In this document: positions 4,601-36,600 of the stretch, piece after piece
Numbering within the stretch: position 1 is the stretch's first letter
How the letters are laid out: each line of letters begins with the position of its first letter
From: Penicillus capitatus
Lineage: Eukaryota > Plantae > Chlorophyta
Assembly: GCA_965649825.1 (NCBI GenBank)
Contig: OZ287719.1
Coordinates: 1-64,000 of the forward strand
DNA: 64,000 nucleotides
Direction of reading: 5' to 3'
The notes under the pieces: generated by a model
The model's database searches: none
Told to the model about the DNA's origin: nothing
What the model saw: only the letters and a program-made list of their open reading frames with translations
Program-made: the position numbers and the translations under genes

Positions 4601-6277
4601 ACGTCGATGCCTCGGATGGAAGCAGCGAGTCTCTGTGTAGCGGAATGGACGTCGTATCTGTGGCAACGGAGAGGGAACTGCGACGGGAACTCCGTCGCAC
4701 CGAGAGCGGCAGAAAGATCATCCTCGACGCGACCGAGTGGAAGCTCGAGGAGACTCTGGAAATTGCCTCGAGTGAGGTCTGCCTCGAAGGAGCGACGAAT
4801 GGCGTCGTCATACACTGTCCGCCGGACGAAAAGGGAAGTGCCGTCGTCGTCAGGTGCGCCGCGCTTCTTCAGGACGTTTAGCGCATCTTCTTTCCGAATG
4901 CAGGTCGACGCGTGCGGCGTTCTCCGATCTGACCTTTTCAGGTTGCCGTGGACACTCGGCAGTGGTGGTCGAGGCCAGACCAAGAAACGAGACGAAAGCG
5001 AGCGTCGTGTTTGACGGGGTCCGCTTCTCACAGAACGGCGACGTCGCGTCCGAAGTCTTCGGTGCCGGCGTCAGGGCGGATTCGTGTAGAGATGGGAACT
5101 GCAGGGCAAGTTCTCTGCACTTCACGAGCTGTCGCTTTTCAGGAAACCGCGCATTCTTTGGCGGAGCCATTTTCGCCAGCGACGCTGATGTTCTGTTCAC
5201 CGACTGCATCTTCGAGGAGAACGAAGCCGCTGTGTCGGGAGGGGCTGTTTACATCAGCGGCATGCAGCAGGAGGTTGGACTGAAGATGAAGCGAGTGATC
5301 TTCGCTAGAAACAGGGCCTACAACGAGACAAAAGCATTGAGAATGATGCTGAAAGCGTCGATACTATATGCTAACGAAACTTCGAGAACCGCAGGAGTGG
5401 GAGGCGCGGTTCATGCAAACAACATCGCCCAGATCAGAATCGAAGGTTCTGATTTCACTAAGAACGTGGCGTGCGGAGGTGGCGGTGCCATCGCTGTGTT
5501 TAACATGCAAAGGCTGCCGGCTTCGAATCTGAGCTATCCATTCAGTATTGATGATGGAACATTCTTCGAGAACGAAGCCTTCTGCGGGACGCAGCCCGAA
5601 GCATTGAGGTTGTATCTCTTAATTTTCTTCCAGTATCGTCTAGGAGGGGCATTGCGATTCGAAGCTTCAAATGATGAGTTCCTAGGATGGCGCATAAGAA
5701 ACAGTTCCTTCCTGGGAAATCGAGCACACTCAGGCGGCGCTGTTTCTCTTACGTCCGATATGCTCTCCGCCACAGAACACAAATTGGAGTCGTGTATGTT
5801 CGACAGCAGCATCGCTCTGTTAAGAGGAGGAGCGATCCTAATCAGCAGAGTTCGTCTGACAGTGAAGCATTCCAACATTACAAACGGCAGATCTGTGCTC
5901 GGTGGCGGAATCTACAGTCATAACACGGGTCGAGTGACGTTCACCGAGGATACTGAGGATCCATCAGTCGATAGCATTATCGAAGGCAACGTGGCCGGTG
6001 GTGGAGGTGGCATCAGTGCAGACGACAGTAAGTAACGTGCCATTCGCAGAATATGGTTACCATGCTGTCATTCAGGTGCGTTGGATCTCGCAGCTCTCAC
6101 TTTGCGGAACAACACTGCCCACTGGATGGGCGGAGGTATTCGTGCAGAGGATACAAGCGAGGATGTTAACCTCAGCGGCATCACCGTCGAGGACAATCGA
6201 TCGCCGGTCGGCGGAGGAGCTATCTTCCGTTCCCTGTCAAACGTCCTTGTCACATCACACAATGGAAGGCCGACCGT

Positions 6278-6581
6278 TGTCGCGTAGGGTTTTAGATGGA
6301 AACAATTTAAACGGTGGGCGCACGTAAACCTTTGAAACGTAAAGTCTTACAAACGAAAGACAAGATCTGTACATCTACAACGCTTTTATAGGGTACTTTA
6401 TTTTAAGTAACAAAAAGGAATATTCTGCGAAGATTCCGGAATCTGCTTGGAATCTGTGACGTAGAGCCGCGGGTCTATTTGTGGATGGAAGCTATAGAGA
6501 ACCTACGACCTGTCACTTGGAGATCGACACAAGTGTAAGTAGATGAGCGCATTATCGTGAGCGCTACGCCTTAACACGACA
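6278..6581 (-). repeat. 3' LTR (304 bp)
   Basis: Reads identical to 12802-13105; TG...CA termini; contains CTATAAAAG and AATAAA on the minus strand. Confidence 0.97.
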
Positions 6582-6602
6582 TGGGCCCACCTATCTTCTG
6601 TC
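6582..6602 (-). other. Putative polypurine tract
   Basis: Purine-rich GACAGAAGATAGGTGGGCCCA immediately before the 3' LTR on the minus strand; imperfect. Confidence 0.4.
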
Positions 6603-9596
6603 TAATCTCCGAAGGAAGTCACGATGGACATTGTGCAGCGTCGAACCGTTGGGCATACGGATATCCCAACGGTGGTCACTATGTTCCTTCACTACAACAC
6701 AAGGAGAGACCCATTTGGAGTATAGTTTGGAGTCGAGGCGGTCGGCCAACTTTGAGTTGTACCACGAGACCTCTGCTCCCACTTCCATGGGACGGTTCTT
6801 GACTTTCTTGTGGTGTCTTGTCTTATTTTGCTGGTGTGCCTTAATTATTCGTTGATAAGCTAGTCCTCGGTCGGTGTCCAGCTGTTGTGGACTAGTTATC
6901 GTGCCGTTCCGTTGTGTGCCAGTTAGAAGGTATTGTGGACAGAACAGAGTCGTACTATGAATCGTTCGGTTGATTTCATGCACGCTCGTGCTCACATGTG
7001 TCGTCCAATCACCCCCCTTTTCCGCCCATATCCTCCGAAGTCGATTTACGAGGTTTCGGTTGAACGCCTCGACAGTGCCTGCACTTTTGTGGGAATAGGT
7101 TGGGGTGTGTAGAATGTCTATTCCGTGCTGTGCGCAGGTACTCTCGAAGCTCCTGGCAATGAAGGCGCTTCCGTTGTCGCACAGGATCCTCTGTGGAGCC
7201 CCAAAGTTTCGTGCCCATTCGAGTACCAGCTTAATAGCCTGTGCTGCCGAGCACGTCTTACATGGGCGCCCCACGCCGAACTTAGTGAAAGCGTCGATCC
7301 CGGTAGCGATATACCGAAACCCATGGCTGCCACGGTTCAGCGGTCCTATGAAGTCTAGACACAGTGTGTGGTTCGGGGATGGACTGTCAATCATACCCAA
7401 GTCCACCTCAGATCGTGGGTTGCGAAACATTTGGCACGTCTCGCAGTTATTGACGTAATCTCGCACGTCATTGAAGTCGTTCGTCCAGCGGGTACCGTCG
7501 GACCGCAGGTTCAGGAATGTCTTCTTGACCCCGAAGTGGCCTGCATGCGCCTTCTTGATGAGCTCGGTCCGTTCTTCCGGAGTATAGGATACGGAGTTCA
7601 CTTGATATCCCTGTTGCTTCTTCTTGGTGTGAAATTCGACAGGTGCGTTGTCTCTCCATCGGCTGAGAAGATCCGCTATCACGTTGTCCTTCCCCTCTAC
7701 AAAACAGAAGTGGAGACGATCATGGGAAAAGTGGTGCCGGAGCCAGCAATGCTGTCTCTGGATCCGGAGGTCCTTGAACTTGTGCAGGAATGTCGGCTCC
7801 TTGAGCCAATTGACCGTAGCCATGTTGTCGGAGTAAACGAATACCTCCGTCTGCTTGATCACAAAGTAACATTCCTTCAAGGCCCGTACTATTCCCATCA
7901 ATTCTCCCAGAAAACTTCCGACCCTCTGTTTTGTCGTAAAAGATCCAAAGAGAACAGGTTGCAAGGTCGAGTTAAGCAAAACGTATCCGAACTGGTTGAG
8001 TGGGTTACCACACCAATCCGTATACAGATGGAATGGCCCCTTTCTTTCCAACGTCAGTCGGTACGTACTGATGCACAGAGATTGAACTGCGTCTTTGTAG
8101 ATCTCGTCGGCTTTGGTGTAGTCGTTGTGTTCGCGTTTCAGGAATGGCTTGAGCCGTGTAACGATCGCGTCGTATTTGTAACAGTACTGTGCCAGTTGCT
8201 GGCACAGACCCATGGCCTTCTGAACGTCGTGACGTGACGTGATTGTCGGCAACTTCTGGAGTATAGCCTGGGCCCTGTGGTAGGGGTTTAGCGTCCCGCC
8301 ACTGAGTTCGGTACCCAGAAAGCTCACCGATGTCTCAAACCAGTCACACTTTTGGCAGTTGATCGTCAGGCCGTATTCGTCAAAACGTTTTAATAAAAGC
8401 TTGGTCTTGTCTAGGAGTTCCTCCTCCGTTTCGCCGCCGATAAGTATGTCATCGAAGTATCGGACCACATCCAATCCTTGTAGGATGTGGGTCATGCGGT
8501 TATTGAAAAGCTCCGGACTGACGTTGACGCCTTGCGGCAGTCTCCGAAAGCCGTACGTCACGCCGTTCCAATGTAGTGCAAAGAAAAGCGAGATATTGTC
8601 GTCGATGGGGATGGAGCCGTAGCCGTGAACAATGTCCACGATGGTGTATACGGTCCACTTGGGATCCACCTTCTGGATGATGTTGGACACCGGAATGATG
8701 GTCCCCCCTTGCGTTCCTTCGAGGTACGTGTTGATGTCGCGGAAGTCAATGGTGGGCCGGATCTTGCCATTCGGTTTGCGTATAAAGTTTAAAGGTGCTA
8801 CGACAGCGTGTATTGCCTCTGCAACAGACAGCTGTCGTATAACACCCTCCTTGTGTAGCGAATCGATCTCTTTTGAGATCTCTTCGTTGGTGAGATCTGA
8901 GACGTAGTTCTCCCTCCAGCATGGCTTAGGCTCACCGTGCCAACAAAGATCCCTGTTGCGTACCCTGATGTCCCACAGCCTGCTGGTCGTCGGGCGAATG
9001 GTGTCCGAAAAGACCAGGGGAAATTCTTCTCTTAGCCGAGCCACTGTTGCATCCTTGTCTACTGGTGTAAGAACGCTAATGTTGTTAACACGCTTGGTCT
9101 TCACTTTCAGCGGGTACTCCGTTCCATCGACGTCGGTGATGGAATCAATGTTTCCTTTAGCACAGCACAGTCGCATCTTGCTGGTGACATGCTGTGGAAC
9201 ATCGGATTGGTTGAAGATTACCACGCTGATCTGACCATTGGCGTGTACCTTGACTTTGCAGAAGATGTTCTTGTTATGAGTACAGTCGAAAAACGCCCTC
9301 CATTCCGTTGTCTCGGTAAATTTGAAGGGTAAGATGATGCGGCGGCTCCGGAAGGGTCCCAGCACAAAACTTCTCCCCGCCATGAAGACGATCCAGTCGT
9401 TTTGTTTGAACGGGAATAATCCCCGATCGATGGATTCGGTGACTTGGAGTGGTGGTGAAGGTGATGGTTCTTCTTTCTGTCTCGCTCGAGGTGCTTCATC
9501 ATTCCAGTTGGCTCTTACTAGTACCAAACGTTTCGTCTGCGGTTCTTGCGTGTCGTCATGTGCCTGCTGAAAAACAGGCGTGTACCTTAGTTTTTT
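6591..9596 (-). CDS. pol: Pol (pseudo-dUTPase, RT, RNase H, integrase), in the -1 frame relative to ORF1
   Basis: RT: RPTIDFRDIN, LPQG, YFDD. RNase H: LYTD, ELMGIV, YSDN, NVIADLLSR. Integrase: HAGH...CETC, LCLDF, DNG, VEAFNR. Frame is open from the slippery site; the track start at 9527 is a TTG. Confidence 0.95.
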   Translation of the reverse strand, partial: KKLRYTPVFQQAHDDTQEPQTKRLVLVRANWNDEAPRARQKEEPSPSPPLQVTESIDRGLFPFKQNDWIVFMAGRSFVLGPFRSRRIILPFKFTETTEWRAFFDCTHNKNIFCKVKVHANGQISVVIFNQSDVPQHVTSKMRLCCAKGNIDSITDVDGTEYPLKVKTKRVNNISVLTPVDKDATVARLREEFPLVFSDTIRPTTSRLWDIRVRNRDLCWHGEPKPCWRENYVSDLTNEEISKEIDSLHKEGVIRQLSVAEAIHAVVAPLNFIRKPNGKIRPTIDFRDINTYLEGTQGGTIIPVSNIIQKVDPKWTVYTIVDIVHGYGSIPIDDNISLFFALHWNGVTYGFRRLPQGVNVSPELFNNRMTHILQGLDVVRYFDDILIGGETEEELLDKTKLLLKRFDEYGLTINCQKCDWFETSVSFLGTELSGGTLNPYHRAQAILQKLPTITSRHDVQKAMGLCQQLAQYCYKYDAIVTRLKPFLKREHNDYTKADEIYKDAVQSLCISTYRLTLERKGPFHLYTDWCGNPLNQFGYVLLNSTLQPVLFGSFTTKQRVGSFLGELMGIVRALKECYFVIKQTEVFVYSDNMATVNWLKEPTFLHKFKDLRIQRQHCWLRHHFSHDRLHFCFVEGKDNVIADLLSRWRDNAPVEFHTKKKQQGYQVNSVSYTPEERTELIKKAHAGHFGVKKTFLNLRSDGTRWTNDFNDVRDYVNNCETCQMFRNPRSEVDLGMIDSPSPNHTLCLDFIGPLNRGSHGFRYIATGIDAFTKFGVGRPCKTCSAAQAIKLVLEWARNFGAPQRILCDNGSAFIARSFESTCAQHGIDILHTPTYSHKSAGTVEAFNRNLVNRLRRIWAEKGGDWTTHVSTSVHEINRTIHSTTLFCPQYLLTGTQRNGTITSPQQLDTDRGLAYQRIIKAHQQNKTRHHKKVKNRPMEVGAEVSWYNSKLADRLDSKLYSKWVSPCVVVKEHSDHRWDIRMPNGSTLHNVHRDFLRRLDRR

Positions 9597-12500
9597 GAAA
9601 CGGTAACGTTGTGGATCAAGATTTTGTTGCCTTTGTCGTCATACACGCAGTCCTCATCGCAGTTGAGCTGCAATTTGAAGGCTTGGAGGGCCTGGAGTCC
9701 TAGAATAGGACGTTGGACACCCTCGCAGACGACAAAGGGTATCTTCGCGCCTTTGTTTCCTAGGGTACACAGCATGCAGACCTCGCCGCTTGTACCAGTC
9801 GTCTGGTTGTTGAAACTCGTCACGTTCTGGACCTTCGCAGACCTGAGCACTAGATTGTGCTTTCGCGCCAGCTTGGCCGGAAGTACATTCGTCTCGGCCC
9901 CGGTATCCAACAGACAAGATATTTTTCCAGCTATGTCCTCCATAGCAAGCATGACGTTGTAACGCGCCATCCTCGCAGAGTTCCGACCCTGAGCTGGAGT
10001 TGTCTGGGATACCTTTTTGGAATCCTGATGTCTAGGAGTTCTTGCGATTGATGGGCAGTCTCTTTTAGAATGGCCCTTACGTCCGCAGTTCTCGCAGGTG
10101 TGTCCAACTTCTTGACGTACATGATGCTTGCCATCGGCCCTGGCGTGCTCTCGACTGTCCCGTTCCTTCTGTAGACATTCGTCGATGATCAGTTGCACGC
10201 GTGGCCAGTTGTCTGCATCTCCCCATGGCAGACCACGCAGACGTGATTGGATTTGAGCGTTCGCAATATTAAAGATTCTCTCCGTCGCCGTAGCATACTT
10301 GACGGGGTCATCTATCAATGCGAGCAGCTTCGACATTCTGCGTGTGAACTGCGAGAGATTCTCTTTACGTTTTGGCAACATCCTGTGTACGTTCTTTACG
10401 GTGGGACCATCTTTCTCGACGCGTCTAGTGGGAGTCTGGCTTTTTGGAGTGTGCGGAGTTGCAGCTTTACTAGGGCGACGATTGTCTGAGTCCTGACGTA
10501 TTTGTTGACTCTGTTTCCGTTCGGTTGTTCCTTGGCTCTCGTGCGATGGCTCAGGCTCGGGGTGATGTAACTCACATCCGACTTGCTGAACTCGCATCCG
10601 ATCCTCAACCGCTTCTACTCGTTGCCCGATAGTAAGTATGCTGGCCTCCACAACCTCTTCCAATCTCCCTTGTCTATTGACAAGTCTGTCCTCGAGTTCT
10701 GCAGCGCGCCTCATAAGCCCATCTTGCATCGCTTGAACACTTTCCATCAAGGATTGTATCAAGTTACGTTGTTCAGTGTCTTGGCGGACTTCCGGCGACG
10801 GGTCTGGGTGGATTTCCGTCACTGGATTTTGTTGGTCTGCCCGTCGTGGTGCCGAATGTTGCGGTGGCGGAGGCGACTGAGATGGCGCGACAGGACGAGA
10901 AGGACTGGATGACGGCGTTGACTCCTGCGGCGGTGACTGGGATGGCGGCGGTGGCGACTGTTGTGTAGGCGTCGGTGGTGACTGCTCTTGTGACGACTGC
11001 TGAGTGGTCAGTTCTTGAGTCAGTTGCTGCGCCTGAGCCCTATGTCCCCGCATCAGATTCCACACGATTCTGAGTAACCAGCAAATCCCCTGGGTTATGG
11101 CTACGACTCGCATCACAACCTTGCGGATGTTCCTGAATACATTCAAGATCCATGCAGCGACCTTGTATAGAAGCATAGCAGCGCCTACCAACTGCCAGCC
11201 GTTCCCCGTCGCCAGGGCACTACGAATTGCTCTGAGTCCAAATTTATCCCAAAGCGTGCCTAACATCCACGTGACCGCGTTATCTCGGGCACCGGTTAGC
11301 CATTTTATAGAGCGGTCGATGAATGTATCATTCCCGTGATTGCTCTCCCAACCGTTAGCCTGGCTTTCGCAGATGCAATCGTCTAGAGCCGTCTTCATGT
11401 TGCTTGTGTGTTCGTTGATCTTGTTTATTGTCTCGCGGATATTATTGAGAGTGTCATTGAGGTGCTGCCAATCGACGTTAGAACTCTTAGCTTGTGACTC
11501 TTGTGACGTTTCAGGTCCTTGGCTGTCTGTCGACGAACCATTTACCGTGATGTTCAGGAACTGGGTGATGCCGTCCAAGGTCTCTGCGACGTGTCGCACT
11601 TCTCCTACGAGAGAGGACTTCCTAGATGGGAAGTTGTTGATGATCGAGACTGTCGCAGTCGTCAACAAGCTCGCTGGAGAGAATACGGACAACACACCTC
11701 TGTTTGTCGCCCAGTTGACGATCCCATGAGCAGTAAGACCTACGACAGCACTAGTGATCATTGCGTCAATATAGTCTGGCCAAGTGATGTCGACTCCCAT
11801 TCTGAAGTCGGGGATCATGGACCAAGATTGCCCATCTTCGACAGGTAGAGCATCTCCCATCTCGTGCAAATTGAAGACATTTTCTGGGGGGAGTTCTTGT
11901 TCTGTCCATTGGTCTTCGGACTCTTCGGACTCTTCGGGATCGGATCGCGGAGCCTCTTCGTCGAATAGATCTTCCGCCAATTCTACCGGAATCTCGTATT
12001 CGTCATACTCGAGTTCGTATGCTTCTGCGCTGGGTTCCGTGTCCAGCGGTAAGTCCGTATTATTCTGCACGTCTTCATGTTCTGCGACGGGGATAGCGAA
12101 CTCAAAACGCCTGCGGAGGGCTCTCGCCGATCCTGCTATGGTACGTCTGTCTTCTTCGGCATGTGTGTCTTCGCACACGAGGTCGTGTACCTTCTGTCTA
12201 GACGCGTCCAGCAGTGTCTTTTGTTCCCACGTCTGTGAATGAGTGCCAGGGATCAGTAGAAAGAAGGACATTCCTGTAGCTAGCAACGGTTTTCCTCCCC
12301 AATAGACCAGGGAACCTTCGCCGAGAAGCATGATCAGCATATTGGCTTCCTCGTACGTAATGCCTTCGCTTGCGTCATAGAAGATGATGCCGTTAGGGCA
12401 CTCTTTGACGAAGACCGCGATCTCCCTTTGAATTATTCTAGCCTCATCCACAGATTTGGATTGCGGTTTAATATACTTGAAACAACTACTCTTTTGCAGA

Positions 12501-12802
12501 CTAGGCTCAGTCTTGATTCCGTTAACCAGCGAGTCGCATGTACTTGTCGTACAGTAGAGAATTGTAGACGTCGCTTTATCGTAAAAATTGTTGCCTACCT
12601 TGTCGTTTATACTACGGGCAAGGTTATCGACATACTGATCTATCCAGTCTCCGCCACCGCGGACGTTTTCCTGGATGCTTGTTAGGGTTTTATTCCGTAA
12701 CCCTATTATTCCATCCTTCCAGCCAAACCATGAGCCGTGCGTGACGGCGGCAAAGTGTAGAAGAACCCACAACAGCATTGGGAGCACTCGCTCCGAAACC
12801 AT
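9587..12802 (-). CDS. gag: ORF1 polyprotein, 1071 aa: signal peptide, AAA-like lumenal domain, ectodomain, TM, Gag (CCHC), aspartic protease
   Basis: N-terminus MVSERVLPMLLWVLLHFAAVTHG; zinc knuckle CENCGRKGHSKRDC (10055-10096); protease CLLDTGAETNVL...PILG; hydrophobic span at about 11050-11200. Confidence 0.9.
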   Translation of the reverse strand: MVSERVLPMLLWVLLHFAAVTHGSWFGWKDGIIGLRNKTLTSIQENVRGGGDWIDQYVDNLARSINDKVGNNFYDKATSTILYCTTSTCDSLVNGIKTEPSLQKSSCFKYIKPQSKSVDEARIIQREIAVFVKECPNGIIFYDASEGITYEEANMLIMLLGEGSLVYWGGKPLLATGMSFFLLIPGTHSQTWEQKTLLDASRQKVHDLVCEDTHAEEDRRTIAGSARALRRRFEFAIPVAEHEDVQNNTDLPLDTEPSAEAYELEYDEYEIPVELAEDLFDEEAPRSDPEESEESEDQWTEQELPPENVFNLHEMGDALPVEDGQSWSMIPDFRMGVDITWPDYIDAMITSAVVGLTAHGIVNWATNRGVLSVFSPASLLTTATVSIINNFPSRKSSLVGEVRHVAETLDGITQFLNITVNGSSTDSQGPETSQESQAKSSNVDWQHLNDTLNNIRETINKINEHTSNMKTALDDCICESQANGWESNHGNDTFIDRSIKWLTGARDNAVTWMLGTLWDKFGLRAIRSALATGNGWQLVGAAMLLYKVAAWILNVFRNIRKVVMRVVAITQGICWLLRIVWNLMRGHRAQAQQLTQELTTQQSSQEQSPPTPTQQSPPPPSQSPPQESTPSSSPSRPVAPSQSPPPPQHSAPRRADQQNPVTEIHPDPSPEVRQDTEQRNLIQSLMESVQAMQDGLMRRAAELEDRLVNRQGRLEEVVEASILTIGQRVEAVEDRMRVQQVGCELHHPEPEPSHESQGTTERKQSQQIRQDSDNRRPSKAATPHTPKSQTPTRRVEKDGPTVKNVHRMLPKRKENLSQFTRRMSKLLALIDDPVKYATATERIFNIANAQIQSRLRGLPWGDADNWPRVQLIIDECLQKERDSREHARADGKHHVRQEVGHTCENCGRKGHSKRDCPSIARTPRHQDSKKVSQTTPAQGRNSARMARYNVMLAMEDIAGKISCLLDTGAETNVLPAKLARKHNLVLRSAKVQNVTSFNNQTTGTSGEVCMLCTLGNKGAKIPFVVCEGVQRPILGLQALQAFKLQLNCDEDCVYDDKGNKILIHNVTVSKN
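9590..9596 (-). promoter_or_regulatory. -1 ribosomal frameshift slippery heptamer A-AAA-AAC
   Basis: ORF1 ends TCA AAA AAC TAA. The -1 frame (AAA AAA CTA AGG TAC...) runs without a stop into pol. Confidence 0.85.
12787..12801 (-). other. Putative primer-binding site (TGGTTTCGGAGCGAG)
   Basis: Starts with TGG directly after the 5' LTR; primer tRNA not identified. Confidence 0.5.
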
Positions 12803-13105
12803 GTCGCGTAGGGTTTTAGATGGAAACAATTTAAACGGTGGGCGCACGTAAACCTTTGAAACGTAAAGTCTTACAAACGAAAGACAAGATCTGTACATCT
12901 ACAACGCTTTTATAGGGTACTTTATTTTAAGTAACAAAAAGGAATATTCTGCGAAGATTCCGGAATCTGCTTGGAATCTGTGACGTAGAGCCGCGGGTCT
13001 ATTTGTGGATGGAAGCTATAGAGAACCTACGACCTGTCACTTGGAGATCGACACAAGTGTAAGTAGATGAGCGCATTATCGTGAGCGCTACGCCTTAACA
13101 CGACA
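12802..13105 (-). repeat. 5' LTR (304 bp)
   Basis: Reads identical to 6278-6581; followed on the plus strand by TSD CCGT. Confidence 0.97.
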
Positions 13106-16100
13106 CCGTTTTCAGAAACAACACCAGTTTGGCCGGAGGGGGTTTGCTCTATGACTGCGGAGATACGATCATGTACACGATTAAGGTATGTTGTTCTGTC
13201 TTCTGTTTCTTTATCAAATCCAACAAAGGAGTTGTGTACACAGGTCGAAAATTCCAGTTTCGTGGGCAATCGTGTTTTGCCGAGGACGGATTCCGACTTT
13301 GTGGCGTTGGTAGAGGAAGGCAACACCTATGAAGTTTATCCACCAGCCTTGGTCAACATCTTGAACAGCGGTGGCCCGGTTGATAACTCCACGGACGACG
13401 TGAACATCGGGACCAATCATTTTGAGGGACACGGTGGCGGTGTTGCCTTCTCTCTTATCGAAGTCCGACCGACCGCCATCGTCCAGATCCTGTTCCAGAA
13501 CGTTGTCATCGAGGAAAACGAAGCCGTCGTCGGGGGTGTGTTCCCAATTGGATGCCATCCACTCACCACAAACCTCTTCTGCAGGTGGCATGTCTTCCGA
13601 CATGACAGGTCCTTTTTGGAATACAGATGACAGGCCTAACTGCGCTTCGATGATCATTGGTTTCGAAGTCTGCCAGAAGTTCGAGGTCCGCAACGTCACG
13701 ATCGTCAAGAATAAGGCAGAGTTCGCCGGTGGTGTGTTCGTCTCTCACCGCGACGGAATTGTCGCCTCCTGTGGTCCTGAAAAGGAAAGATTCACAGCTA
13801 GCGACCATGCCAGTGCAGTTACTGGAACAGACGTGGCATCTCGCTATTGTGTGAAGATCCAAGGCAACTCGCGCGTCGATGGCAAGCTTGACACGGCTGA
13901 GGCAGCAACACGAGCCGTGCAGCTGCACGTCGAAGGAGGGAGAGACCGGCTGAAGCGAGTGGCCAGTGGAGAGGCTCTCGCACTGCCATGCCAAGACAGG
14001 CTGAATTCAAGCTGCTCAGTGCCATTTCGCATCCATGTGAAGGACGCGTTCAATCAGACGATCGACGGCGGCATCGAAGACGCGAACCTGGATGTCAGCA
14101 TCACCTCCGACGACATCGTCGGAGACCAGAGGTACTCGGCGGAGAAGGGAATCGTGACGATCGACAACACGCAAGCATGGGGCATCAACCGGGACAGCAC
14201 AGTGACCATCGCGAGTCGAAGAGACAGCAGCATCAAGGTCGAGCTGCCCCTGTCCACGAGGGAATGCTATCCAGGAGAGATCGAGCACGACGACGTCTGC
14301 AACGCGTGTCCGACGGACCAGTACAGCTTCTTACCGTCTCTCAAAAAGTGCGAGAGCTGTGAAGAGAATGCAGAGTGCGGCGGCGGTGCTGTGTTGGTGC
14401 CGACGGAGGGTTACTGGCATTCCACGCCTTTCTCCCCGGTCTTCCACAAGTGCACCTACTTCACCGCCTGTCACTACGACAGAAGACGCGAGAAGTTGAT
14501 GCAGTTCTACGAAGATCCGGAGGAACTGAAGAGGCAGTTGGACAGACTCGGTCGCTATCTGGAGAACAGCGAAATGGAAGAACCTGACTTCGCAGACTAT
14601 CAGCAGTGCGACGAAGGTTACGGTGGCCCCCTCTGCGGCTCCTGTCAGCAGGGATACGGTCACTCCTACACGGGAGAGTGTGAGGCATGTCCAGAGCGAA
14701 GATCGGCAGCGCGACTCCGTTTCTTCTTCACCGTTGTCTTCCTGTTCTTTGTAGTCGGCAGCAACTGCATCATCACACTGGTGTCTTCAAGAGCACGAGT
14801 GACGCTGGCCAAGCACGAGATGAAGACTGCAGCGAGGACTGTGACAAAAACGCATTCGGCAATCACTTCTGCCAGAAATCCATCAGCGACAAGCTCGAGG
14901 CTCATCTCCCGTCGCTCAGGTATTCAGCAAAGATACCTGCCTTGAATTCCTTCCATCGACTGTCCCGTTTAGGCTTCAGCGACGTCGGTGGACATCCAGA
15001 CACATCGACGCGGCTCATCCTCGCGCAGCAGCTTGCGGCCACGATCATGCTGACGGAGACTCTGAAGGCAAGAATACTTCCCTACCGTTCTCATCGAACA
15101 CGTCAACTGTCGACAGATTCTGATCAACTATCTCCAAGTCACTGGCGCCGCCCTGCGTCTGCAGGCCGACTGGAGTCCACTGTTAAAATCCCTCCTTAAA
15201 ATTGAAGGTGAAGCGAGCAGACGCGTTCAGTATTTCTCACCTTTTGTGCTGTTCAGCTTCGCTGGTCGGGTCACTGACTGCTGTCATGTCCGCCCCCTAC
15301 GAGTGCTGTCATCAGAATGTCGACATGTCCGCCTCGGTCGCTGCAGCGTGGATGAGACTGGCGATACCATGGATCGTCCTGCCCGGCCTGCTCATCACTC
15401 TTGTCGCCATCTGGGCTGCCGTCTGTGCCTGGACGGCGTGCAAGCAGAAGTGGAAGGCAGACGCTGACAATACTTTCACTGCCGAACGCCTGATGACCTA
15501 CGCCATCATCATCTCCATCGTCTCGATGCACTTTAACTACATCAACGTGGTCAGAGAACTCCTCAAGGCCGTCAACTGTGTGGACATGGCCGATGCCTAT
15601 GAAGAAGTCGGCTTCGACCACCCATTTCGAGACTACGCGACGGAGACTGTCGATCGCACCGTCTGGGCCGAGGACACAGAACTGGCGTGCTTCCGAGGAT
15701 CCCATCTCCCGCTCGGCGTCATCGGCATCGTCGGTCTGGTCGCATCCTTGCTGGGCATCGTCGCCATCATTCTCTGGCTGCCGCTGAACAGGAAGCACAA
15801 GGGGAAGACCACCTTCATCGAGAGGTACTGGTTTCTGTACCAAGCCTACAGGCGCGACTGGTACACAGTCGCCTGGGAGTCTGTCATTCTGGTTAGGAAG
15901 TCAATGATCGCCGCGGCCGTCGTGTTCTCCGTCCACATGACGCCGAACCTCCAAGCCTCCATCTGCGCAGGAGTCCTGACATTCGCTCTGGCCGCGCACG
16001 CCATCTTCATGCCCTTCAAGATCCCAGAAGAGCATCCGAACGTCCCGGACTACGCCGGCGGTCTGTTCCGCATCGTCCGTCTGCCGTCACTTGCAAGGAG

Positions 16101-26936: not shown

Positions 26937-28926
26937 ATGTCGACATTCCGACGCATCGAACGTGGATTCGCGATCATCGGTTTGGCAGCGACGGCGGCTG
27001 CGGGACTTGGATGTTATGCACTTTATTCCTACCACAAGGTCACATCATTTTCCCTCGGTCACCTCGACGTGTCCCTTTCACAGGACTCGGATAAAAGCCT
27101 CTCGGATCTTGGTCGTCCGACAGGACTCCGGGGTCGAAAACTGCCGAAAGAATTTATTCTACATTTAGACCTAGACCGAACGACCATCACAGATGCTCCC
27201 TCATCCATGACGTACCTGTCCCATCAACAGCCTCCACTAAAGGCCACACTTTTCTCCGTGTAGACCCTGGGAATCCTTTCTGAGTGGCGAGACACAGACG
27301 CTGTCGTTAAGAACCGTCGTCAAGAGCATCGAATCTGCCGCTGAGGATGAACGGGTGAAAGGGTTTCTGACCACAGGTCACATCATCTCACACATTTCCC
27401 ACGCAATGGTGTGATCAGGGACTCATGGAGTTCATGGCCTAGCCATGATTCAAGAACTGCGAAACGCCGTATGCAAATTTAATCAAGCCGGAAAGCGACT
27501 CTCCTCTGTTTTCCATACCGACACGTTCGGTGAAGCCGACAACAAGACACTGGTGTACTACTTGGCATCCGCCTACAAAAAAATCTTTATGCAGCCAACG
27601 GGGCGCATGTGTACCACCGGGTTCAGTCTCAGCACTCCCTTTTTCAAAGATCTATTGGAGAAATGGCGCATTAAGTTTCGCGTCTGGGCCAAAGAGGAAT
27701 TCAAGACGGCCTTTAATCTCTTTACTGAGAAAGAATTCACAGTTCCGCACAGGGAGCAGATGACCTGGATACTGGACGGCATTTTTAATCAGGTGACGGC
27801 AGGGATCTCTGAATCGAGAGGCATGTCACAGAACGAAGTTGAGGCGGCCATCTCTGCCGCACCGATGTCTGCTCAAGAAGCTCAAGCGAAGGGTCTGCTC
27901 GACAGGATCCTGTACAAAGATGATATCTGGACACACATGAGTGATGGTCAACAACTGCCGACGGTCTCAATCAGGGACTACGCTCGGATCAAGGCACAAG
28001 AAGAGAGAAAGCGCAAGAAGAAGCCAGAGGTGGCCGTGATGAATCTTTCGGGTCCTATCTTTGTGGGATGGCAGCCGCCTTCTTCTCAACATCCGTCGAT
28101 CTGTTCTGCCAGAGTCGCTGAGCAGTTCAATCAATTAGCCAAGAACGAAAACATCAAGGCTGTGGTGCTGAGATTGGACTCGGGAGGTGGATCCGCTGTG
28201 GCGTCCGACAGCATCCGACAGCACATTGCCAAGATCAAAGATGCAGGAAAGTATGTCGTTGTGAGCATGGGCAATATTGCTGCGTCAGGAGGATACTACA
28301 TCTCCCTCGGTGCCCATGCCATCGTCGCCAATCCTGGTGTGGCGGCGCCGCCACCTTGGATCGTGTGATGTGACAGGTCTTGCTGTTTAGGGACGCTGAC
28401 GGGGAGCATCGGCGTCATCGTGAGCAGTCCATTTCTCAAATCCGCTCTGGAAGAGCACGGCATTTCGGTGGAGGTTTTGAAGAAAGGCAACAATGCAGAT
28501 ATGCTGTCGCCGTTCACCGAGATCACTCCAGAACAGCAGACCATCCTCGATCATCTCCTCGATACAGTCTACAACGATTTCATCCGCAAAGTGTCAGAAG
28601 CGCGTAACAAGCCGATCAGTACGGTTGAGTCCAAAGCCAAGGGACGTATCTGGTTGGGTGCCGATGCCTATGAAGAAGGACTGGTGGATGAGTTGGGTGG
28701 ATTGAGTGAGGCCATCGAACGGGCCAAGAGCGGTGCCCATCTGGCCTCGGATGCCTGTGTCATGGAGTATCCCATTCCCAATCGATTTGTTCAAGTGCTG
28801 AGTTCTTTGGTGCACCAGTTCCATCTACAAGTCATCCTTCCCTTTCCTCTTCCCTCAATGGCATCATCATCCTCTTTCGAGTTGTACAGCTTTGAGGCTG
28901 AATACATTCTTGGCTCTCTCTCATGA
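26937..28926 (+). CDS. SPPA: Signal peptide peptidase A / protease IV (S49), multi-exon
   Basis: Motifs KAVVLRLDSGGGSAVASD, VVSMGNIAASGGYYIS, TLTGSIGV, KGRIWLGADAYEEGLVDELGG. Confidence 0.92.
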
Positions 28927-33636: not shown

Positions 33637-36600
33637 ATGAACCCGTATGTCGATGAAGAAGACCTTTTGGGTTTTCACGTTTTCGTCGCCGAGTTGGAAC
33701 TGGTGACGGCGGCGCGACGCGATGGCGCCTTCGATGAGGTCGCTCTGCTAGAGCTTCTTCAAAAGCTGCTCCTCTCAGTCGACCATACCGACCTCAAAGT
33801 CGTCAAAGAATACCAGCGACGCTGCGAACAGTCCCTCATCGCCCTCCTCTTACGCGGGCCTTGCGCCGAAGTAGACACTCCTGTCACATCACAGCATCCA
33901 CAGGCCCTGCCCTTAGGTCCGGCACCTCATCGCCGTCACACTGTCCAAACTCTATGACGTGGCCGACCGTCTCCCACTGTTCTCGCAAATCAACACCCTC
34001 CAAGGCATTCTGCTCTCCAAAGATGCCTTCGGCAAGAAAATCTCAGAAGTGAGGGTGGGATGGGAATGTGGGGAGGTGATGGGTGTGTTGCGTAGAATGC
34101 GAAGTTGGGTATGTTGAATGCGGTGACCTTGCTCTGCAAAGATCACGGGACACATGTGGTCTCCTCACTTCCTGCCCTCATATCGACGGGCGTGAAGCAT
34201 GCTCAACGATCCCCTGGCACGCCAGCCATACGCATTGCGGCGTCAACACTCGTTTCTGTCGCCCTTTGTGCTCTGGCAAACGATCCACGGCACGCTGTCA
34301 CATCACAAGCGGGATCTTTGAAACTCGCTGAACGTCACATCAAAGTGATCGGTCTCACTCTTTTGCATCGGCCTGAAGTGGACGTGGATGTGGAAAACAG
34401 ACAGGAAAGAGTGAGGAGATACGGATAGCGGGACTACGTATGATTCGGGCGGTCGGTCGAGCGGGAGCGGCGGCGTTGTGGCTGCTCGGTGGTGCTCCCT
34501 ATGAAGAGATTTTCAAACTCGTTCTTCAGTCCTTAAGTGACCCCTCTGCCGTATCTATGCCTGCTCACTCTTTCCGCCCACGTCACATCACTCTTTGTGC
34601 TTAGTCTGTTCGGAATGCCTGCAGCGAAGCGCTCGGCGAATTGGTGGCTGTCTTGAAATCTCCTGTTCTGCAAGAAGCTGTCGAGAAGGAGGCAAAGGAA
34701 AACAAAAAACAGAGTCTACAACGCCTCGCTGCCCGATCCTTCTCTGACGCCCTATCTCACACTTTCTGCGAATCTGCACTTCTTAACAAACGGGTGGGCA
34801 TCTTTGAAGCACTCCATCGAGCAAAAGAGTGAGGCCCACGTGTCTGTCTCTAGTCCATATGTGTGGTCGTTGCCAAATCATGGGTCTCTTATCTCTCTGC
34901 TCTGGCCTCCCATGCCACACCAGACGAGAACGATCTCGTACGTTACGCCATCGAGCTCATCAGCATCATGTCCAAGCTCCCGACGCTGCAGCCCGATCTC
35001 AGAGGCAGAGAAGCAGCCGATCTGTCCATCGAAGTGGGTCATGGACTGGCCACAGGAGAGTTCCCAATGGCACAAGCTTGTATCCTCTACGCTCTGAGGA
35101 CAGGCGTCTTCCGTGCCACCTCCGAATCTGGTCAGCGCAAACTGGTGGATCAGTTGAGCATCTTGTTGGCAAGTGTCTTGGGGAACTGCGTCCCGGTCGC
35201 CGTCTGCAGTTTGGAAGGCATTCGTGTGCTGCTGAGTTTCTTGGGAGAGGTCTCGCCCGAGACGGCCTCGGATCTTGGGATCACCTTTATGGAGAAGCTC
35301 GTATCGAACAGCGCCGCCGTCCGTGCCCAGGCGGCGGCTGCACTGGGCAGTCTTGTTCGTGCCGATTCAGCCTGTGCCGCGACGTTGATCACGAGCTGCA
35401 TCGAATTTCTGAAAAACCAAGTGGAGCAACTGACATCCCTCTCGGCACGTTACGGCGCCATGCATCCACTGCCTGGCAACTTTGTCCCCCAGGTTCCCGA
35501 AGTCTACTCCCTGCCCGAAGATGCCGTCAAAAAATCACAAGACTCCAGAGTACGAGAGGCCATGCACGCAGTGTATGGCTATGCCACAGGATTGGCAGCT
35601 CTGTTGGTGTCCTCCTCGACGACCTTCCTCAACGTGCCTTCCAAACTGTTCACGGAGGCCTACGACTATGCCTCGCAACTCATCCGGGCGCCGCAATCTA
35701 CCGTGGCCAATTCCTGGGCCATCGAAATGAAGGCAGGGTATTGCATCTTGGGTGCGCTCTGCGTTGCCATGCCGCCTCCTCTGCTGACTTCCAAAGGCGA
35801 TCTGCTTGAGCTTTTTGAGCCGGCGCTGGGATCTTCTGCCCAGGCGCTTATCCTCAACAAAGGACTGCAGAAATCTGGCAAAGAGATCGATCTGTCGCTG
35901 CAGCTCTGGTGGAGGTCCGAAGGACTGTTGGCCCTCGAAGTCTACATCCGTTCCATTCTTGATCACTCCTCATCGCACACATCCAAACAACAGACCCAGC
36001 ACATTGTCACTCTACTGGCGCCTCTGCTGGATGGACTCGCATCGAGCGAAGATCTCAGAGATCCGCAACAGGTGAATGGAGGACCTGGTGGATGGACGGC
36101 TGGTACACTGGCCTACCTGCAACTGCGTTTGCTCGCCATTTTCTGTCTGCTGCCAGAATGCAGCGTCGACACACAGCCGCACACACATCTGGTGAAACTC
36201 TGTTCTCAGCCGTTCGCCCCGGCCACCTCACTCCTCAATGCATCGAACACAGCCAGCTCTGTCAGCAGTGTCCTTCTCAGAAGTGTCCTGGAAAACGGCG
36301 ACAGTCATTTAGGTCCGTGGTCGATGGAAGAGGAGCCGATTGAAGAGAAACTCCAGCAGATGACGGGAGAACGAGGCGCCCCACATTATGCTGGATGGGA
36401 ATGTGGTCTGTCCGTTTGGGGCACATCGATGACCCACGTGTCCGAATCTGTGAAGAAACTGGACATCGAGCCGGCACCGTTTCCGCAGTACACATCTCTG
36501 GCCGTCAGCCTCGTCCAACACCAAGTCACCGTCTTTGGAAAGCTCCTCAATGTTGCCACGCTCTCTGGCAGAATGCGGCTGCTGGAGCGACTCATCTCTT

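What the first reader, a model, noticed from the sequence alone, without database searches (positions are those of the whole stretch)
9587..12802. Gypsy retrotransposon whose Gag-protease is fused behind a secretory-pathway glycoprotein
Seen: one uninterrupted 1071-aa ORF with a cleavable-looking signal peptide (LLWVLLHFAAVTHG|S). It continues with ~520 aa carrying six N-glycosylation sequons (NKT, NNT, NIT, NGS, NDT, NDT), a hydrophobic/amphipathic membrane span, a Pro/Ser/Gln linker, a coiled coil, a capsid-like helical region, a CCHC knuckle and a DTG protease. No separate env exists: pol stops 9 nt from the 3' LTR. Established: Ty3/Gypsy Gag is normally cytosolic, and env, where present, is a separate ORF after pol. 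Inference: an Env-like-Gag-PR polyprotein that tethers capsid assembly to ER or nuclear-envelope membranes at 1:1 stoichiometry. I do not recognise this architecture from described elements; it is the best candidate for a new system here.
Basis: partly seen in the sequence, partly recalled or inferred. Interest (0 to 1): 0.9.

Follow-up and report, generated by a model that had tools for sequence, protein, structure and literature searches.

The report
Retrotransposon Gag fused to luminal pseudo-ATPase
An apparently intact, recently inserted Ty3/Gypsy-type retrotransposon makes its Gag-protease as the tail of a membrane protein whose N-terminal, probably ER-luminal, domain is not a viral envelope protein but a nucleotide-free AAA+ fold like those of the Clp/torsin group, an arrangement I found described nowhere.

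Summary
On the minus strand lies a 6,828-bp LTR element (6278-13105) with 100% identical 304-bp LTRs, a 4-bp target duplication, a 1071-aa ORF1 and a pol reached by a conserved -1 frameshift signal. ORF1 has a signal-peptide-like start, about 510 residues before a membrane span, a Pro/Ser/Gln linker, a long helix, a CCHC knuckle and a DTG protease.

Residues about 75-240 are a degenerate AAA+ domain of the Clp/Hsp100-D2/torsin type, not an Env. This rests on a profile against PDB (E 1.6e-6 to Skd3/CLPB) and on AF2 plus Foldseek (Skd3, ClpC, TorsinA). The domain has no Walker A and no Walker B Glu, but keeps an invariant Arg triplet.

Its only other relatives are cellular proteins, including Chlorella SAP-TM-domain proteins whose layout resembles the torsin activator LAP1. 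No viral glycoprotein matched. A capsid fold was not confirmed, and the sequon count is no more than chance.

The fusion is kept in four full sister copies and in a degraded copy at 32% identity. dN/dS is 0.2-0.3. I found no description of this module.

Best reading: a membrane-anchored Gag-PR whose luminal pseudo-ATPase oligomerises or engages a luminal AAA+ partner. It is a new variant of a known kind.

The parts
6278..13105 (-). Whole LTR retrotransposon (6,828 bp)
   Evidence: Identical LTR pair, TSD, PBS, PPT and two ORFs.
12802..13105 (-). 5' LTR (304 nt, TG...CA)
   Evidence: 100% identical to the 3' LTR. Boundaries read.
6278..6581 (-). 3' LTR
13106..13109 (.). Target-site duplication CCGT (the other copy is at 6274-6277)
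12784..12801 (-). Primer-binding site TGGTTTCGGAGCGAGTGC. It doubles as codons 1-6 of ORF1: the ATG is the last LTR base plus TG of the PBS.
   Evidence: It is identical or nearly so in L001, L003 and L004. The tRNA was not identified; it is not the window's tRNA-Leu.
9587..12802 (-). ORF1, 1071 aa: membrane module plus Gag-PR polyprotein (stop included)
12734..12802 (-). Signal-peptide-like segment, aa 1-23
   Evidence: Hydrophobicity and the -3/-1 rule. Divergent relatives and the cellular homologues P0011 and P0019 also start with hydrophobic segments. Not run through a predictor.
12068..12625 (-). Nucleotide-free AAA+-like domain, aa ~60-245 (confident model 75-240). Cys84/Cys89 stand in place of the P-loop, 'IIFYDA' in place of Walker B, and the Arg triplet lies at 230-232.
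   Evidence: Profile vs PDB: Skd3/CLPB E 1.6e-6, then ClpC, ClpB, ClpA and Hsp104. AF2 pLDDT 70-89. Foldseek: Skd3, ClpX, ClpC, TorsinA. Motifs in the alignment.
11783..12067 (-). Acidic, probably disordered linker, aa 246-340 (32% D+E)
11636..11773 (-). Pair of moderately hydrophobic Ser/Thr/Gly-rich helices, aa 344-389; role unknown
   Evidence: Conserved in P0006.
11210..11626 (-). Helical stalk, aa 393-531. It holds a clean heptad stretch (446-475), an invariant C-x-C (476, 478), three conserved sequons and a Trp-rich membrane-proximal part.
   Evidence: Low-confidence model; no homologue outside the element family.
11036..11200 (-). Membrane span (about aa 536-557) followed by a basic amphipathic helix (559-589)
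   Evidence: AF2 gives one helix, pLDDT 68-84. Seven basic and no acidic residues follow the span.
10808..11035 (-). Pro/Ser/Gln/Thr-rich linker, aa 590-665
   Evidence: It is the most divergent segment between copies.
10577..10798 (-). Long helix / probable coiled coil, aa 669-742
10139..10408 (-). Conserved small helical region before the knuckle, aa 799-888. This is the candidate capsid-like part, unconfirmed.
   Evidence: Conservation. Three helices at pLDDT 55-64. No capsid hit.
10049..10099 (-). CCHC zinc knuckle (nucleocapsid), aa 902-918
   Evidence: Pfam PF00098 E 3.3e-4. PDB nucleocapsid and knuckle hits.
9653..9970 (-). Retropepsin-type aspartic protease, aa 945-1050 (D966-T-G)
   Evidence: Pfam PF13975, PF13650 and PF00077.
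9590..9596 (-). Slippery heptamer A_AAA_AAC directly before the ORF1 stop
   Evidence: Identical in all five copies.
9562..9579 (-). Conserved hairpin 10 nt after the slippery site
   Evidence: The fold as a whole is no more stable than shuffles, z = 0.08.
6591..9638 (-). pol frame (-1 relative to ORF1; open from 9638, stop 6593-6591): RT, RNase H, integrase
8307..8783 (-). Reverse transcriptase
   Evidence: PF00078 E 2.5e-22.
7659..8039 (-). RNase H
   Evidence: PF13456 and PF17917, both weak.
7092..7580 (-). Integrase (H2C2 zinc domain plus core)
   Evidence: PF17921 E 4e-11, PF00665 E 2e-14.
6586..6603 (-). Purine-rich tract overlapping the end of pol, next to the 3' LTR (candidate PPT)
   Evidence: Read.

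Best explanation
ORF1 encodes a type I membrane polyprotein.

Shown:
- A single conserved reading frame runs, in order: a signal-peptide-like segment; a nucleotide-free AAA+-like domain of the Clp/Hsp100-D2/torsin type; an acidic linker; a helical stalk; one membrane span; a basic juxtamembrane helix; a Pro/Ser/Gln linker; and Gag (helix, zinc knuckle) plus protease.
- Pol follows by -1 frameshifting.

Inferred:
- The N-terminal ~510 residues lie in the ER lumen or perinuclear space, and Gag-PR lies on the cytosolic face.
- The pseudo-ATPase keeps only what a catalytically dead AAA+ subunit needs to sit in a ring: the core fold and an invariant Arg cluster at the end of the last core helix.
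- It therefore either self-assembles into rings or docks onto a luminal AAA+ partner, as LAP1/LULL1 do with torsin.
- Either way it clusters Gag on the ER or nuclear-envelope membrane and seeds particle assembly there.
- The element's own protease could then cut within the linker and release Gag from its anchor.

The module was most probably captured from a cellular gene of the family still seen as SAP-TM-domain proteins in Chlorella.
For: Architecture and intactness.

AAA+ nature of residues 75-240:
- Profile vs PDB: E 1.6e-6 to Skd3/CLPB, followed only by ClpC, ClpB, ClpA and Hsp104.
- AF2 pLDDT 70-89, with five core strands plus a beta hairpin before strand 4.
- Foldseek top hits are Skd3, ClpX, ClpC and TorsinA 6oif/5j1s.
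- Weak Pfam AAA_2 in two members.

Degenerate motifs and the invariant Arg triplet: alignments.

Luminal side:
- The cellular homologues place the domain behind a signal peptide (P0011, P0019), or across a TM from a nuclear SAP domain (P0015, P0018, P0020).
- A Cys pair is invariant.
- P0015 is an intron-containing Chlorella ohadii gene.

Cytosolic Gag: seven basic and no acidic residues follow the span.

Selection and age:
- dN/dS is 0.2-0.3 on the luminal parts at dS about 1.
- There are four full sister elements.
- A degraded copy at 32% ORF1 identity is collinear over residues 1-1071.
- Sister LTR pairs are 99.7-100% identical.

LAP1 precedent: a nucleotide-free AAA+ luminal domain without the small domain, with an Arg finger that activates torsin (PMC4358337).

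ER-linked Gag precedent: Ty1 (PMC3945221).
Against: - No topology or signal-peptide predictor could be run.
- The hydrophobic segments are only marginal on a crude insertion scale (best +2.8). A second segment (559-584) could in principle span the membrane and put Gag in the lumen.
- No sequence similarity to torsin, LAP1 or LULL1 themselves was found at E<=10.
- Equivalence of the Arg triplet with an arginine finger was not shown residue by residue.
- Torsins are described from metazoans (PMC7175109). I could not search the unnamed host for a luminal AAA+ partner.
- A capsid fold was not confirmed.
- Residues 341-530 have no model or homologue, and their heptad plus C-x-C would also fit a fusion-protein stalk.
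- There are no expression or protein data.
Confidence: 0.5

Rival explanations
1. The N-terminal module is a true envelope equivalent. Residues 341-590 would be a class-I-like fusion stalk (hydrophobic segments, heptad repeat, Cys motif, Trp-rich membrane-proximal region, TM). The AAA+-like domain would serve as the surface or receptor-binding head. Gag as its cytoplasmic tail would give enveloped particles at 1:1 stoichiometry for cell-to-cell spread.
For: - The layout is signal-like start, ectodomain, TM, tail.
- The heptad at 446-475 scores 0.88 against a shuffle 95th percentile of 0.70, and is directly followed by an invariant C-x-C.
- A conserved hydrophobic pair lies at 344-389.
- Three of the conserved sequons lie in the stalk.
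- Env upstream of gag exists as an ORF order in mite elements (PMC13524379).
Against: - No hit to any viral glycoprotein by Pfam, PDB profile or BFVD fold search. In 1.84 billion representatives, only element copies match residues 270-590.
- No cleavage site lies next to the hydrophobic segments.
- The polybasic motif belongs to the AAA+-like domain and is shared with cellular proteins.
- dN/dS is 0.2-0.3, with no sign of diversifying selection.
- Sequon count is at chance.
- The model of this region has pLDDT below 50.
Confidence: 0.2
2. ER or nuclear-envelope retention signal only. The module merely targets Gag to internal membranes, as the N-terminal change does in murine IAP elements or the leader in MLV glyco-Gag. 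The AAA+-like fold would be an inert, captured scaffold.
For: - Membrane targeting needs only the signal and the span.
- Gag/ER links are known for Ty1 (PMC3945221). The IAP and glyco-Gag precedents are from my own knowledge and were not checked here.
Against: About 500 luminal residues are kept under purifying selection across lineages down to about 30% identity, including the Cys pair and the Arg triplet shared with cellular homologues. That is far more than targeting needs.
Confidence: 0.15
3. Passenger or annotation artefact. The N-terminal half would be a transduced host gene fragment without function for the element, or would not be part of the same protein because of splicing or internal initiation.
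For: - LTR elements do capture host fragments.
- No expression data exist.
- An internal-deletion derivative that joins the N-terminal domain to integrase occurs on several contigs.
Against: - The frame is open and collinear in every full copy, and collinear though broken in degraded copies at 32% and about 60% identity.
- dN/dS is 0.2-0.3.
- The start codon is built from the LTR end and the PBS, so no other leader or first exon is available.
Confidence: 0.05

Closest known systems
LAP1 / LULL1, the luminal activators of torsin ATPases (PMC4358337)
   Same: Both are membrane-anchored. Both carry a luminal AAA+-like domain of ClpB-D2 topology without Walker A, with a spoiled Walker B, without the C-terminal small domain, with conserved cysteines, and with a strictly conserved arginine close to the end of the domain. 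In both, the other side of the membrane carries the 'business' part: lamina/chromatin binding there, SAP in the Chlorella homologues, Gag here.
   Different: There is no detectable sequence similarity. The orientation is type I here against type II in LAP1. Equivalence of the arginine is not shown. Partner ATPase unknown. The host is apparently not a metazoan.
Clp/Hsp100 D2 AAA+ modules (Skd3/CLPB, ClpB, ClpC, ClpA) and torsinA
   Same: These are the best sequence-profile and fold matches. The core fold is shared, with a hairpin before strand 4.
   Different: No P-loop, no catalytic Glu, no small domain. It therefore cannot be an ATPase.
Ty3/Gypsy elements with env (errantiviruses), including the ENV-GAG-POL order reported in oribatid mites (PMC13524379)
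   Same: Same LTR element backbone, with a membrane protein encoded upstream of gag.
   Different: There env is a separate ORF and a recognisable F-type or gB-type fusogen. Here the module is fused in frame to Gag-PR and matches no known fusogen.
sORF2 / FAST-like small TM proteins upstream of gag in MDG1-group elements (PMC11952523)
   Same: An accessory membrane protein encoded 5' of gag in env-less Gypsy elements.
   Different: sORF2 is about 70 aa, a separate ORF, with a ~30-aa ectodomain. Here the module is about 590 aa, fused, with a folded luminal domain.
Gag forms that enter the secretory pathway: MLV glyco-Gag, the ER-targeted Gag of murine IAP elements (own knowledge, not checked here), and Ty1 Gag at the ER (PMC3945221)
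   Same: Gag is linked to the ER membrane or lumen.
   Different: Those use short leaders or signals. None carries a large folded luminal domain or a type I anchor N-terminal to Gag.
Gag-PR fusion ORFs in plant Tat/Ogre elements (PMC4408406)
   Same: The protease is encoded at the end of the gag ORF rather than in pol.
   Different: No membrane module. Those are plant elements with other extra ORFs.

Membership tests
Ty3/Gypsy (Metaviridae) LTR retrotransposon | Direct LTRs ending TG...CA, flanked by a short target duplication | tested here: met
   LTRs of 304 nt, 100% identical; 4-bp TSD.
Ty3/Gypsy (Metaviridae) LTR retrotransposon | PBS next to the 5' LTR and a purine tract next to the 3' LTR | tested here: met
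   TGG... starts at the first base after the LTR and is conserved in the sisters. A purine-rich tract lies before the 3' LTR. The primer tRNA was not identified.
Ty3/Gypsy (Metaviridae) LTR retrotransposon | Pol domain order PR, RT, RNase H, integrase (integrase last) | tested here: met
   Pfam positions.
Ty3/Gypsy (Metaviridae) LTR retrotransposon | Gag with capsid and nucleocapsid | tested here: inconclusive
   The zinc knuckle is found. No capsid match by Pfam, PDB profile or fold search of a low-confidence model.
Ty3/Gypsy (Metaviridae) LTR retrotransposon | RT groups with Ty3/Gypsy in a phylogeny | not tested
   No reference set was available in the tools. Pfam Integrase_H2C2 and RT_RNaseH are the types usual in this group.
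Retroviral / errantiviral envelope glycoprotein | Homology or fold match to a known viral fusion glycoprotein | tested here: not met
   None in Pfam, the PDB profile, BFVD or 1.84 billion representatives.
Retroviral / errantiviral envelope glycoprotein | Signal peptide, ectodomain and C-terminal membrane anchor | tested here: inconclusive
   The features are present by hydrophobicity. No dedicated predictor was run.
Retroviral / errantiviral envelope glycoprotein | Convertase site directly before a fusion peptide | tested here: not met
   The only polybasic motif (RALRRR, 227-232) is a motif of the AAA+-like domain shared with cellular proteins. It is followed by an acidic stretch.
Retroviral / errantiviral envelope glycoprotein | Own ORF or spliced mRNA | tested here: not met
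   It is in frame with Gag-PR in all full copies.
AAA+ ATPases, Clp/Hsp100-D2 / torsin group | Alpha-beta-alpha core with five parallel strands, and a beta hairpin before the sensor-1 strand | tested here: met
   AF2 strands at 78-84, 108-111, 139-143, 179-185 and 235-239, hairpin at 165-174. Foldseek and profile hits.
AAA+ ATPases, Clp/Hsp100-D2 / torsin group | Walker A P-loop and Walker B Asp-Glu | tested here: not met
   Between strand 1 and helix 1 all members have C-x(4-6)-C and no G-K-[ST]. No Asp-Glu is conserved after strand 3.
AAA+ ATPases, Clp/Hsp100-D2 / torsin group | C-terminal small helical (lid) domain | tested here: not met
   The domain is followed by an acidic, disordered stretch. 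The free-standing homologues end 12-20 residues after the Arg triplet.
LAP1/LULL1-type torsin activators | Luminal nucleotide-free AAA+-like domain without the small domain | tested here: met
   Criteria taken from PMC4358337.
LAP1/LULL1-type torsin activators | Strictly conserved arginine placed as a trans-acting finger | tested here: inconclusive
   R230-R232 are nearly invariant in 14 sequences, at the end of the last core helix. No residue-level superposition was possible.
LAP1/LULL1-type torsin activators | Sequence homology to LAP1/LULL1 | tested here: not met
   They are not among PDB hits at E<=10, nor in the 50 Foldseek matches listed.
LAP1/LULL1-type torsin activators | Binds and activates a luminal torsin ATPase | not testable with these tools

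The most novel reading that the evidence does not exclude
The element carries a viral-style mimic of a torsin activator. Its luminal pseudo-ATPase would recruit the host's luminal AAA+ membrane-remodelling machine to the exact spot where Gag, its own cytoplasmic tail, assembles. Capsids would then bud into or across the ER or nuclear envelope. This would be an envelope-free route through the nuclear envelope, or between cells, unknown for any retroelement. The hexameric AAA+ ring might template the Gag hexamer across the bilayer.
Probability: 0.12. Interest if true: 0.9.

Novelty: new variant of a known kind. Interest (0 to 1): 0.72.

Why it matters
LTR retrotransposons are thought to build their particles free in the cytosol. 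Membrane proteins, where present, are separate env or small ORFs. Here a family that looks recently active, and is conserved under selection, makes Gag-PR as the tail of a membrane protein. The luminal head of that protein belongs to the Clp/torsin branch of AAA+ proteins and has the hallmarks of a dead, ring-completing subunit.

If the head engages a luminal ATPase or self-assembles, it would link retroelement assembly to the poorly understood torsin-type machinery of the ER and nuclear envelope. It would also give a natural probe for that machinery outside animals.

The cellular relatives (SAP-TM-pseudo-ATPase proteins in Chlorella) suggest that LAP1-like nuclear-envelope proteins exist outside Metazoa, which is of interest in its own right.

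Tried and rejected
Searches that found nothing or little:
- Other copies in the window: none.
- The window's own ORF1 in the public gene index: not on record.
- Naming the host failed. Cluster look-ups of neighbouring host genes (RPB1 and others) gave only unnamed ENA entries. The sample accessions are in no paper. Rfam gave only one tRNA.
- JGI metagenome contigs scanned with the N-terminal profile and with pol: nothing. IMG/VR: nothing.
- Search with Gag-PR alone: only fragments of the same family, so no lineage lacking the module could be identified.

Ideas tested and dropped or left open:
- Capsid: PDB profile, Pfam at E<=10, and AF2 plus Foldseek all found nothing beyond the knuckle.
- 'RALRRR is a furin site': rejected, because the motif is shared with cellular homologues, and my R-x-[KR]-R scan found no canonical site.
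- 'Six sequons show a glycoprotein': the count is at chance.
- 'Fast-evolving, Env-like ectodomain': rejected. The high divergence of the N-terminal part in two sisters goes with high dS, so it reflects recombination between sublineages, and dN/dS stays at 0.2-0.3.
- The PBS does not match the window's tRNA-Leu.
- The frameshift hairpin is conserved, but the 100-nt fold is no more stable than shuffles.

Slip to report. They were not used as queries, in scripts or in this report. All comparisons rest on tool hits.

Full report
**1. What is there**

The finding's coordinates are right, but the gene is on the minus strand. The ORF listing and translation give an uninterrupted frame from the ATG at 12802 to the stop at 9589-9587, 1071 aa. 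A longer version from an ATG at 12898 lies inside the LTR.

The ORF sits in a complete LTR element, 6278-13105, 6,828 bp:
- Two 304-nt LTRs, 100% identical and ending TG...CA.
- A 4-bp target duplication, CCGT on the + strand.
- A TGG... primer-binding site starting at the first base after the 5' LTR.
- A purine-rich tract overlapping the end of pol. The pol stop lies 9 nt from the 3' LTR.

The ORF1 start codon is made of the last LTR base plus the first two PBS bases. The PBS therefore encodes residues 1-6 (MVSERV). This is conserved in the sisters and even in a 29%-identical relative (P0008).

Pol (RT E 2.5e-22, RNase H, integrase H2C2 plus core) is in the -1 frame, open from 9638. ORF1 ends ...TCA AAA AAC TAA. 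A_AAA_AAC is a classical -1 slippery heptamer. It is followed after 10 nt by a hairpin. Both are conserved in all five copies.

There is no third ORF. The window holds only this copy.

**2. ORF1 anatomy**

| Residues | Feature |
|---|---|
| 1-23 | Signal-peptide-like (R5, hydrophobic core, T-H-G) |
| ~60-245 | Folded alpha/beta domain |
| 246-340 | Acidic linker (32% D+E), disordered |
| 344-389 | Two moderately hydrophobic Ser/Thr/Gly-rich helices |
| 393-531 | Helices, with a clean heptad stretch at 446-475 (score 0.88; shuffle 95th percentile 0.70), an invariant C-x-C (476/478) and a Trp-rich end |
| ~536-557 | Best membrane-span candidate (one Lys inside) |
| 559-589 | Basic amphipathic helix (seven basic, no acidic residues) |
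| 590-665 | Linker, 71% P/S/Q/T |
| 669-742 | Long helix (pLDDT 70-83) |
| 743-810 | Disordered |
| 815-888 | Three helices, low confidence |
| 902-918 | CCHC knuckle (PF00098, E 3.3e-4) |
| 945-1050 | DTG protease (PF13975, E 6.6e-6, just under the curated cut-off; also PF13650, PF00077) |

Six is what shuffles give (mean 4.8, P 0.36). Four are conserved in the sisters. The 'capsid-like' part could not be confirmed by Pfam, PDB profile or fold search.

**3. What the N-terminal domain is**

Pfam sees nothing in residues 1-590. A profile of the N-terminal 590 residues was searched against 1.84 billion representatives. It found only 17 proteins.

- Most of the 17 are fragments of the same element family.
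- Six are different proteins that match only positions ~70-240 (P0011, P0015, P0016, P0018, P0019, P0020).

The alignment shows shared motifs:
- A strand followed by C-x(4-6)-C.
- A 'CPNGVIV' strand.
- 'LSE-G-S...G'.
- A hydrophobic strand.
- A nearly invariant 'ALRRR(I/F)(D/E)..P' close to the end of the domain.

Evidence for the fold:
- A profile of this alignment hits solved structures of Skd3/CLPB (E 1.6e-6), then only ClpC, ClpB, ClpA, ClpE and Hsp104 second AAA+ modules.
- The AF2 model is confident for exactly this domain (pLDDT 70-89). It shows five core strands plus a hairpin before strand 4.
- Foldseek against PDB returns Skd3, ClpX, ClpC, TorsinA (6oif, 5j1s) and ClpB-D2, at E about 1e-5.
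- BFVD returns only P-loop ATPases and no glycoprotein.
- Two members touch Pfam AAA_2 weakly.

No member has a P-loop or a Walker B Asp-Glu. No small domain follows. The domain is therefore a nucleotide-free AAA+ fold of the Clp/torsin branch.

**4. Which side of the membrane**

- The free-standing homologues begin with signal-like segments (P0011, P0019).
- The longer ones have an N-terminal SAP domain, then a TM, then one or two copies of the domain (P0015, P0018, P0020).
- Three are named Chlorella proteins (C. ohadii, C. sorokiniana, C. vulgaris).
- P0015 is an intron-containing gene next to ordinary host genes.
- SAP is a nuclear DNA-binding domain. The AAA+-like domain across the membrane from it would therefore lie in the perinuclear lumen.
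- The invariant Cys pair fits an oxidising compartment.

This layout is nucleoplasmic domain, TM, then a luminal nucleotide-free AAA+ domain without a lid and with a conserved arginine near its end. It is that of LAP1, which completes and activates torsin rings through an arginine finger (PMC4358337). The resemblance is one of architecture. LAP1, LULL1 and torsin are not sequence hits, and I could not superpose residues.

**5. Is the fusion real and functional**

Four sister elements in ENA assembly ERZ25074695 (L001-L004) are full-length, with LTR pairs 99.7-100% identical.

- Three of the four have an open ORF1 of the same architecture.
- In the fourth (L002), ORF1 is read in two frames.
- In L001, pol is read in two frames.

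Between copies, dN/dS is:
- 0.23-0.31 for the AAA+-like domain.
- 0.17-0.26 for the stalk at dS about 1.
- 0.07-0.10 for the protease.

Along one and the same pair of copies, dS runs from 0 to above 1. The copies are therefore recombinant mosaics. This explains why two sisters are only 56-57% identical in the N-terminal domain yet nearly identical in the TM segment and the linker, and one of them (L004) in Gag as well.

A second assembly (ERZ26696514) holds two degraded copies:
- One at about 60% identity, covering residues 276-1071.
- One at 32.5% ORF1 identity (pol 63%) that is collinear over residues 1-1071, but split over three frames in ORF1 and three in pol.

The module is therefore ancestral to a family that has diverged deeply. 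No relative was found in JGI metagenome contigs or IMG/VR. The host could not be named. Its genes are intron-poor and include Chlam_PMP/beta-helix proteins, HEATR5 and peptidase S49.

**6. Mechanism**

Shown: the reading frame, the domain identities above, conservation and selection.

Inferred:
- Type I topology, with the first ~510 residues luminal and Gag-PR cytosolic. The basic stretch after the span argues for this.
- The pseudo-ATPase self-assembles or docks on a luminal AAA+ partner, and so clusters Gag at the ER or nuclear-envelope membrane.
- The protease frees Gag by cutting in the linker.

Rivals:
- A real envelope with a class-I-like stalk. The heptad plus C-x-C keep it alive. The absence of any glycoprotein match, of a cleavage site next to a fusion peptide and of diversifying selection argue against it.
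- A mere targeting device. That is too little to explain ~500 conserved residues.
- A passenger or annotation artefact. Conservation, and the start codon built into the PBS, argue against it.

**7. Comparison with what is known**

- Env-carrying Gypsy elements normally have env after pol. GAG-ENV-POL orders, and in two mites ENV-GAG-POL, are reported (PMC13524379), but as separate ORFs with recognisable fusogens.
- MDG1-group elements have a ~70-aa TM protein, sORF2, upstream of gag (PMC11952523).
- Gag-PR fusion ORFs occur in plant Tat/Ogre elements (PMC4408406).
- Ty1 Gag passes through the ER (PMC3945221).
- MLV glyco-Gag and IAP Gag are further precedents from my own knowledge.
- None has a large folded luminal domain fused to Gag.
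- A literature search for torsin together with LTR retrotransposons found nothing relevant.

I file the element as a Ty3/Gypsy-type element, although its RT was not placed in a phylogeny. It carries a new accessory module, so it is a new variant of a known kind.

**8. Caveats**

- No signal-peptide or topology predictor was available.
- The alignments are shallow, and the stalk and Gag models are of low confidence.
- The host is unknown and there are no expression data.
- Slip: while reasoning I wrote from memory short motif fragments of cellular AAA+ proteins (ClpB, torsinA).

Noticed in passing
P0015, P0020, P0021, P0023 (Chlorella spp.); L008:6001-12125: Cellular proteins with an N-terminal SAP domain, a TM segment and one or two nucleotide-free AAA+-like domains. 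This is a LAP1-like nuclear-envelope architecture in green algae, whereas the torsin/LAP1 system is described from metazoans. P0015 is an intron-containing host gene.
   Followed up: partly
window 12784-12802 (minus strand); L001, L003, L004 equivalents: The ORF1 start codon is formed by the last LTR base plus the PBS, and the PBS encodes residues 1-6 (MVSERV). The same start is kept in a 29%-identical relative (P0008). There is therefore essentially no untranslated leader between U5 and the ORF.
   Followed up: partly
L001-L004 compared with window 9587-12802: The copies are recombinant mosaics. Between the same two copies, dS runs from 0 (TM segment, linker) to above 1 (AAA+-like domain, protease).
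   Followed up: yes
P0008 / P0048 (515 aa; ENA contigs of 1.2 and 1.8 Mb): An internal-deletion derivative. The first ~190 residues of the luminal module are joined in frame to the integrase part of pol. It is present on at least three contigs and is possibly a non-autonomous sub-family.
   Followed up: no
L007:7366-13533 and L005:5373-10167 (ENA ERZ26696514): Degraded copies of distant lineages of the same family in a second assembly. The L007 copy has 32% ORF1 identity and is collinear over the whole ORF1. The L005 copy has about 60% identity over residues 276-1071. L007 is flanked by an NB-ARC/TPR gene.
   Followed up: partly
window 9562-9596 (minus strand): A_AAA_AAC slippery heptamer abutting the ORF1 stop, plus a hairpin 10 nt downstream. 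Both are conserved in five copies, although the stop codon itself varies (TAA/TGA).
   Followed up: yes
window 4854-6035, 13151-14945 and 55600-56760: ORFs with Chlam_PMP repeats or beta-helix flank the element. Joining the two flanks (empty site) gives a 286-aa open stretch across the junction with PMP-like Gly motifs, so the element may have landed inside such a gene.
   Followed up: partly
window 34863-39033 and 27445-28368: Long intron-free host ORFs (HEATR5/Laa1 HEAT region, peptidase S49). Together with an intron-free RPB1 in L003, they point to an intron-poor eukaryotic host that could not be named.
   Followed up: partly
L002:20085-20813: A second, partial RT/integrase-bearing fragment lies about 4 kb downstream of the sister element. 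It may be a nested or neighbouring element remnant.
   Followed up: no
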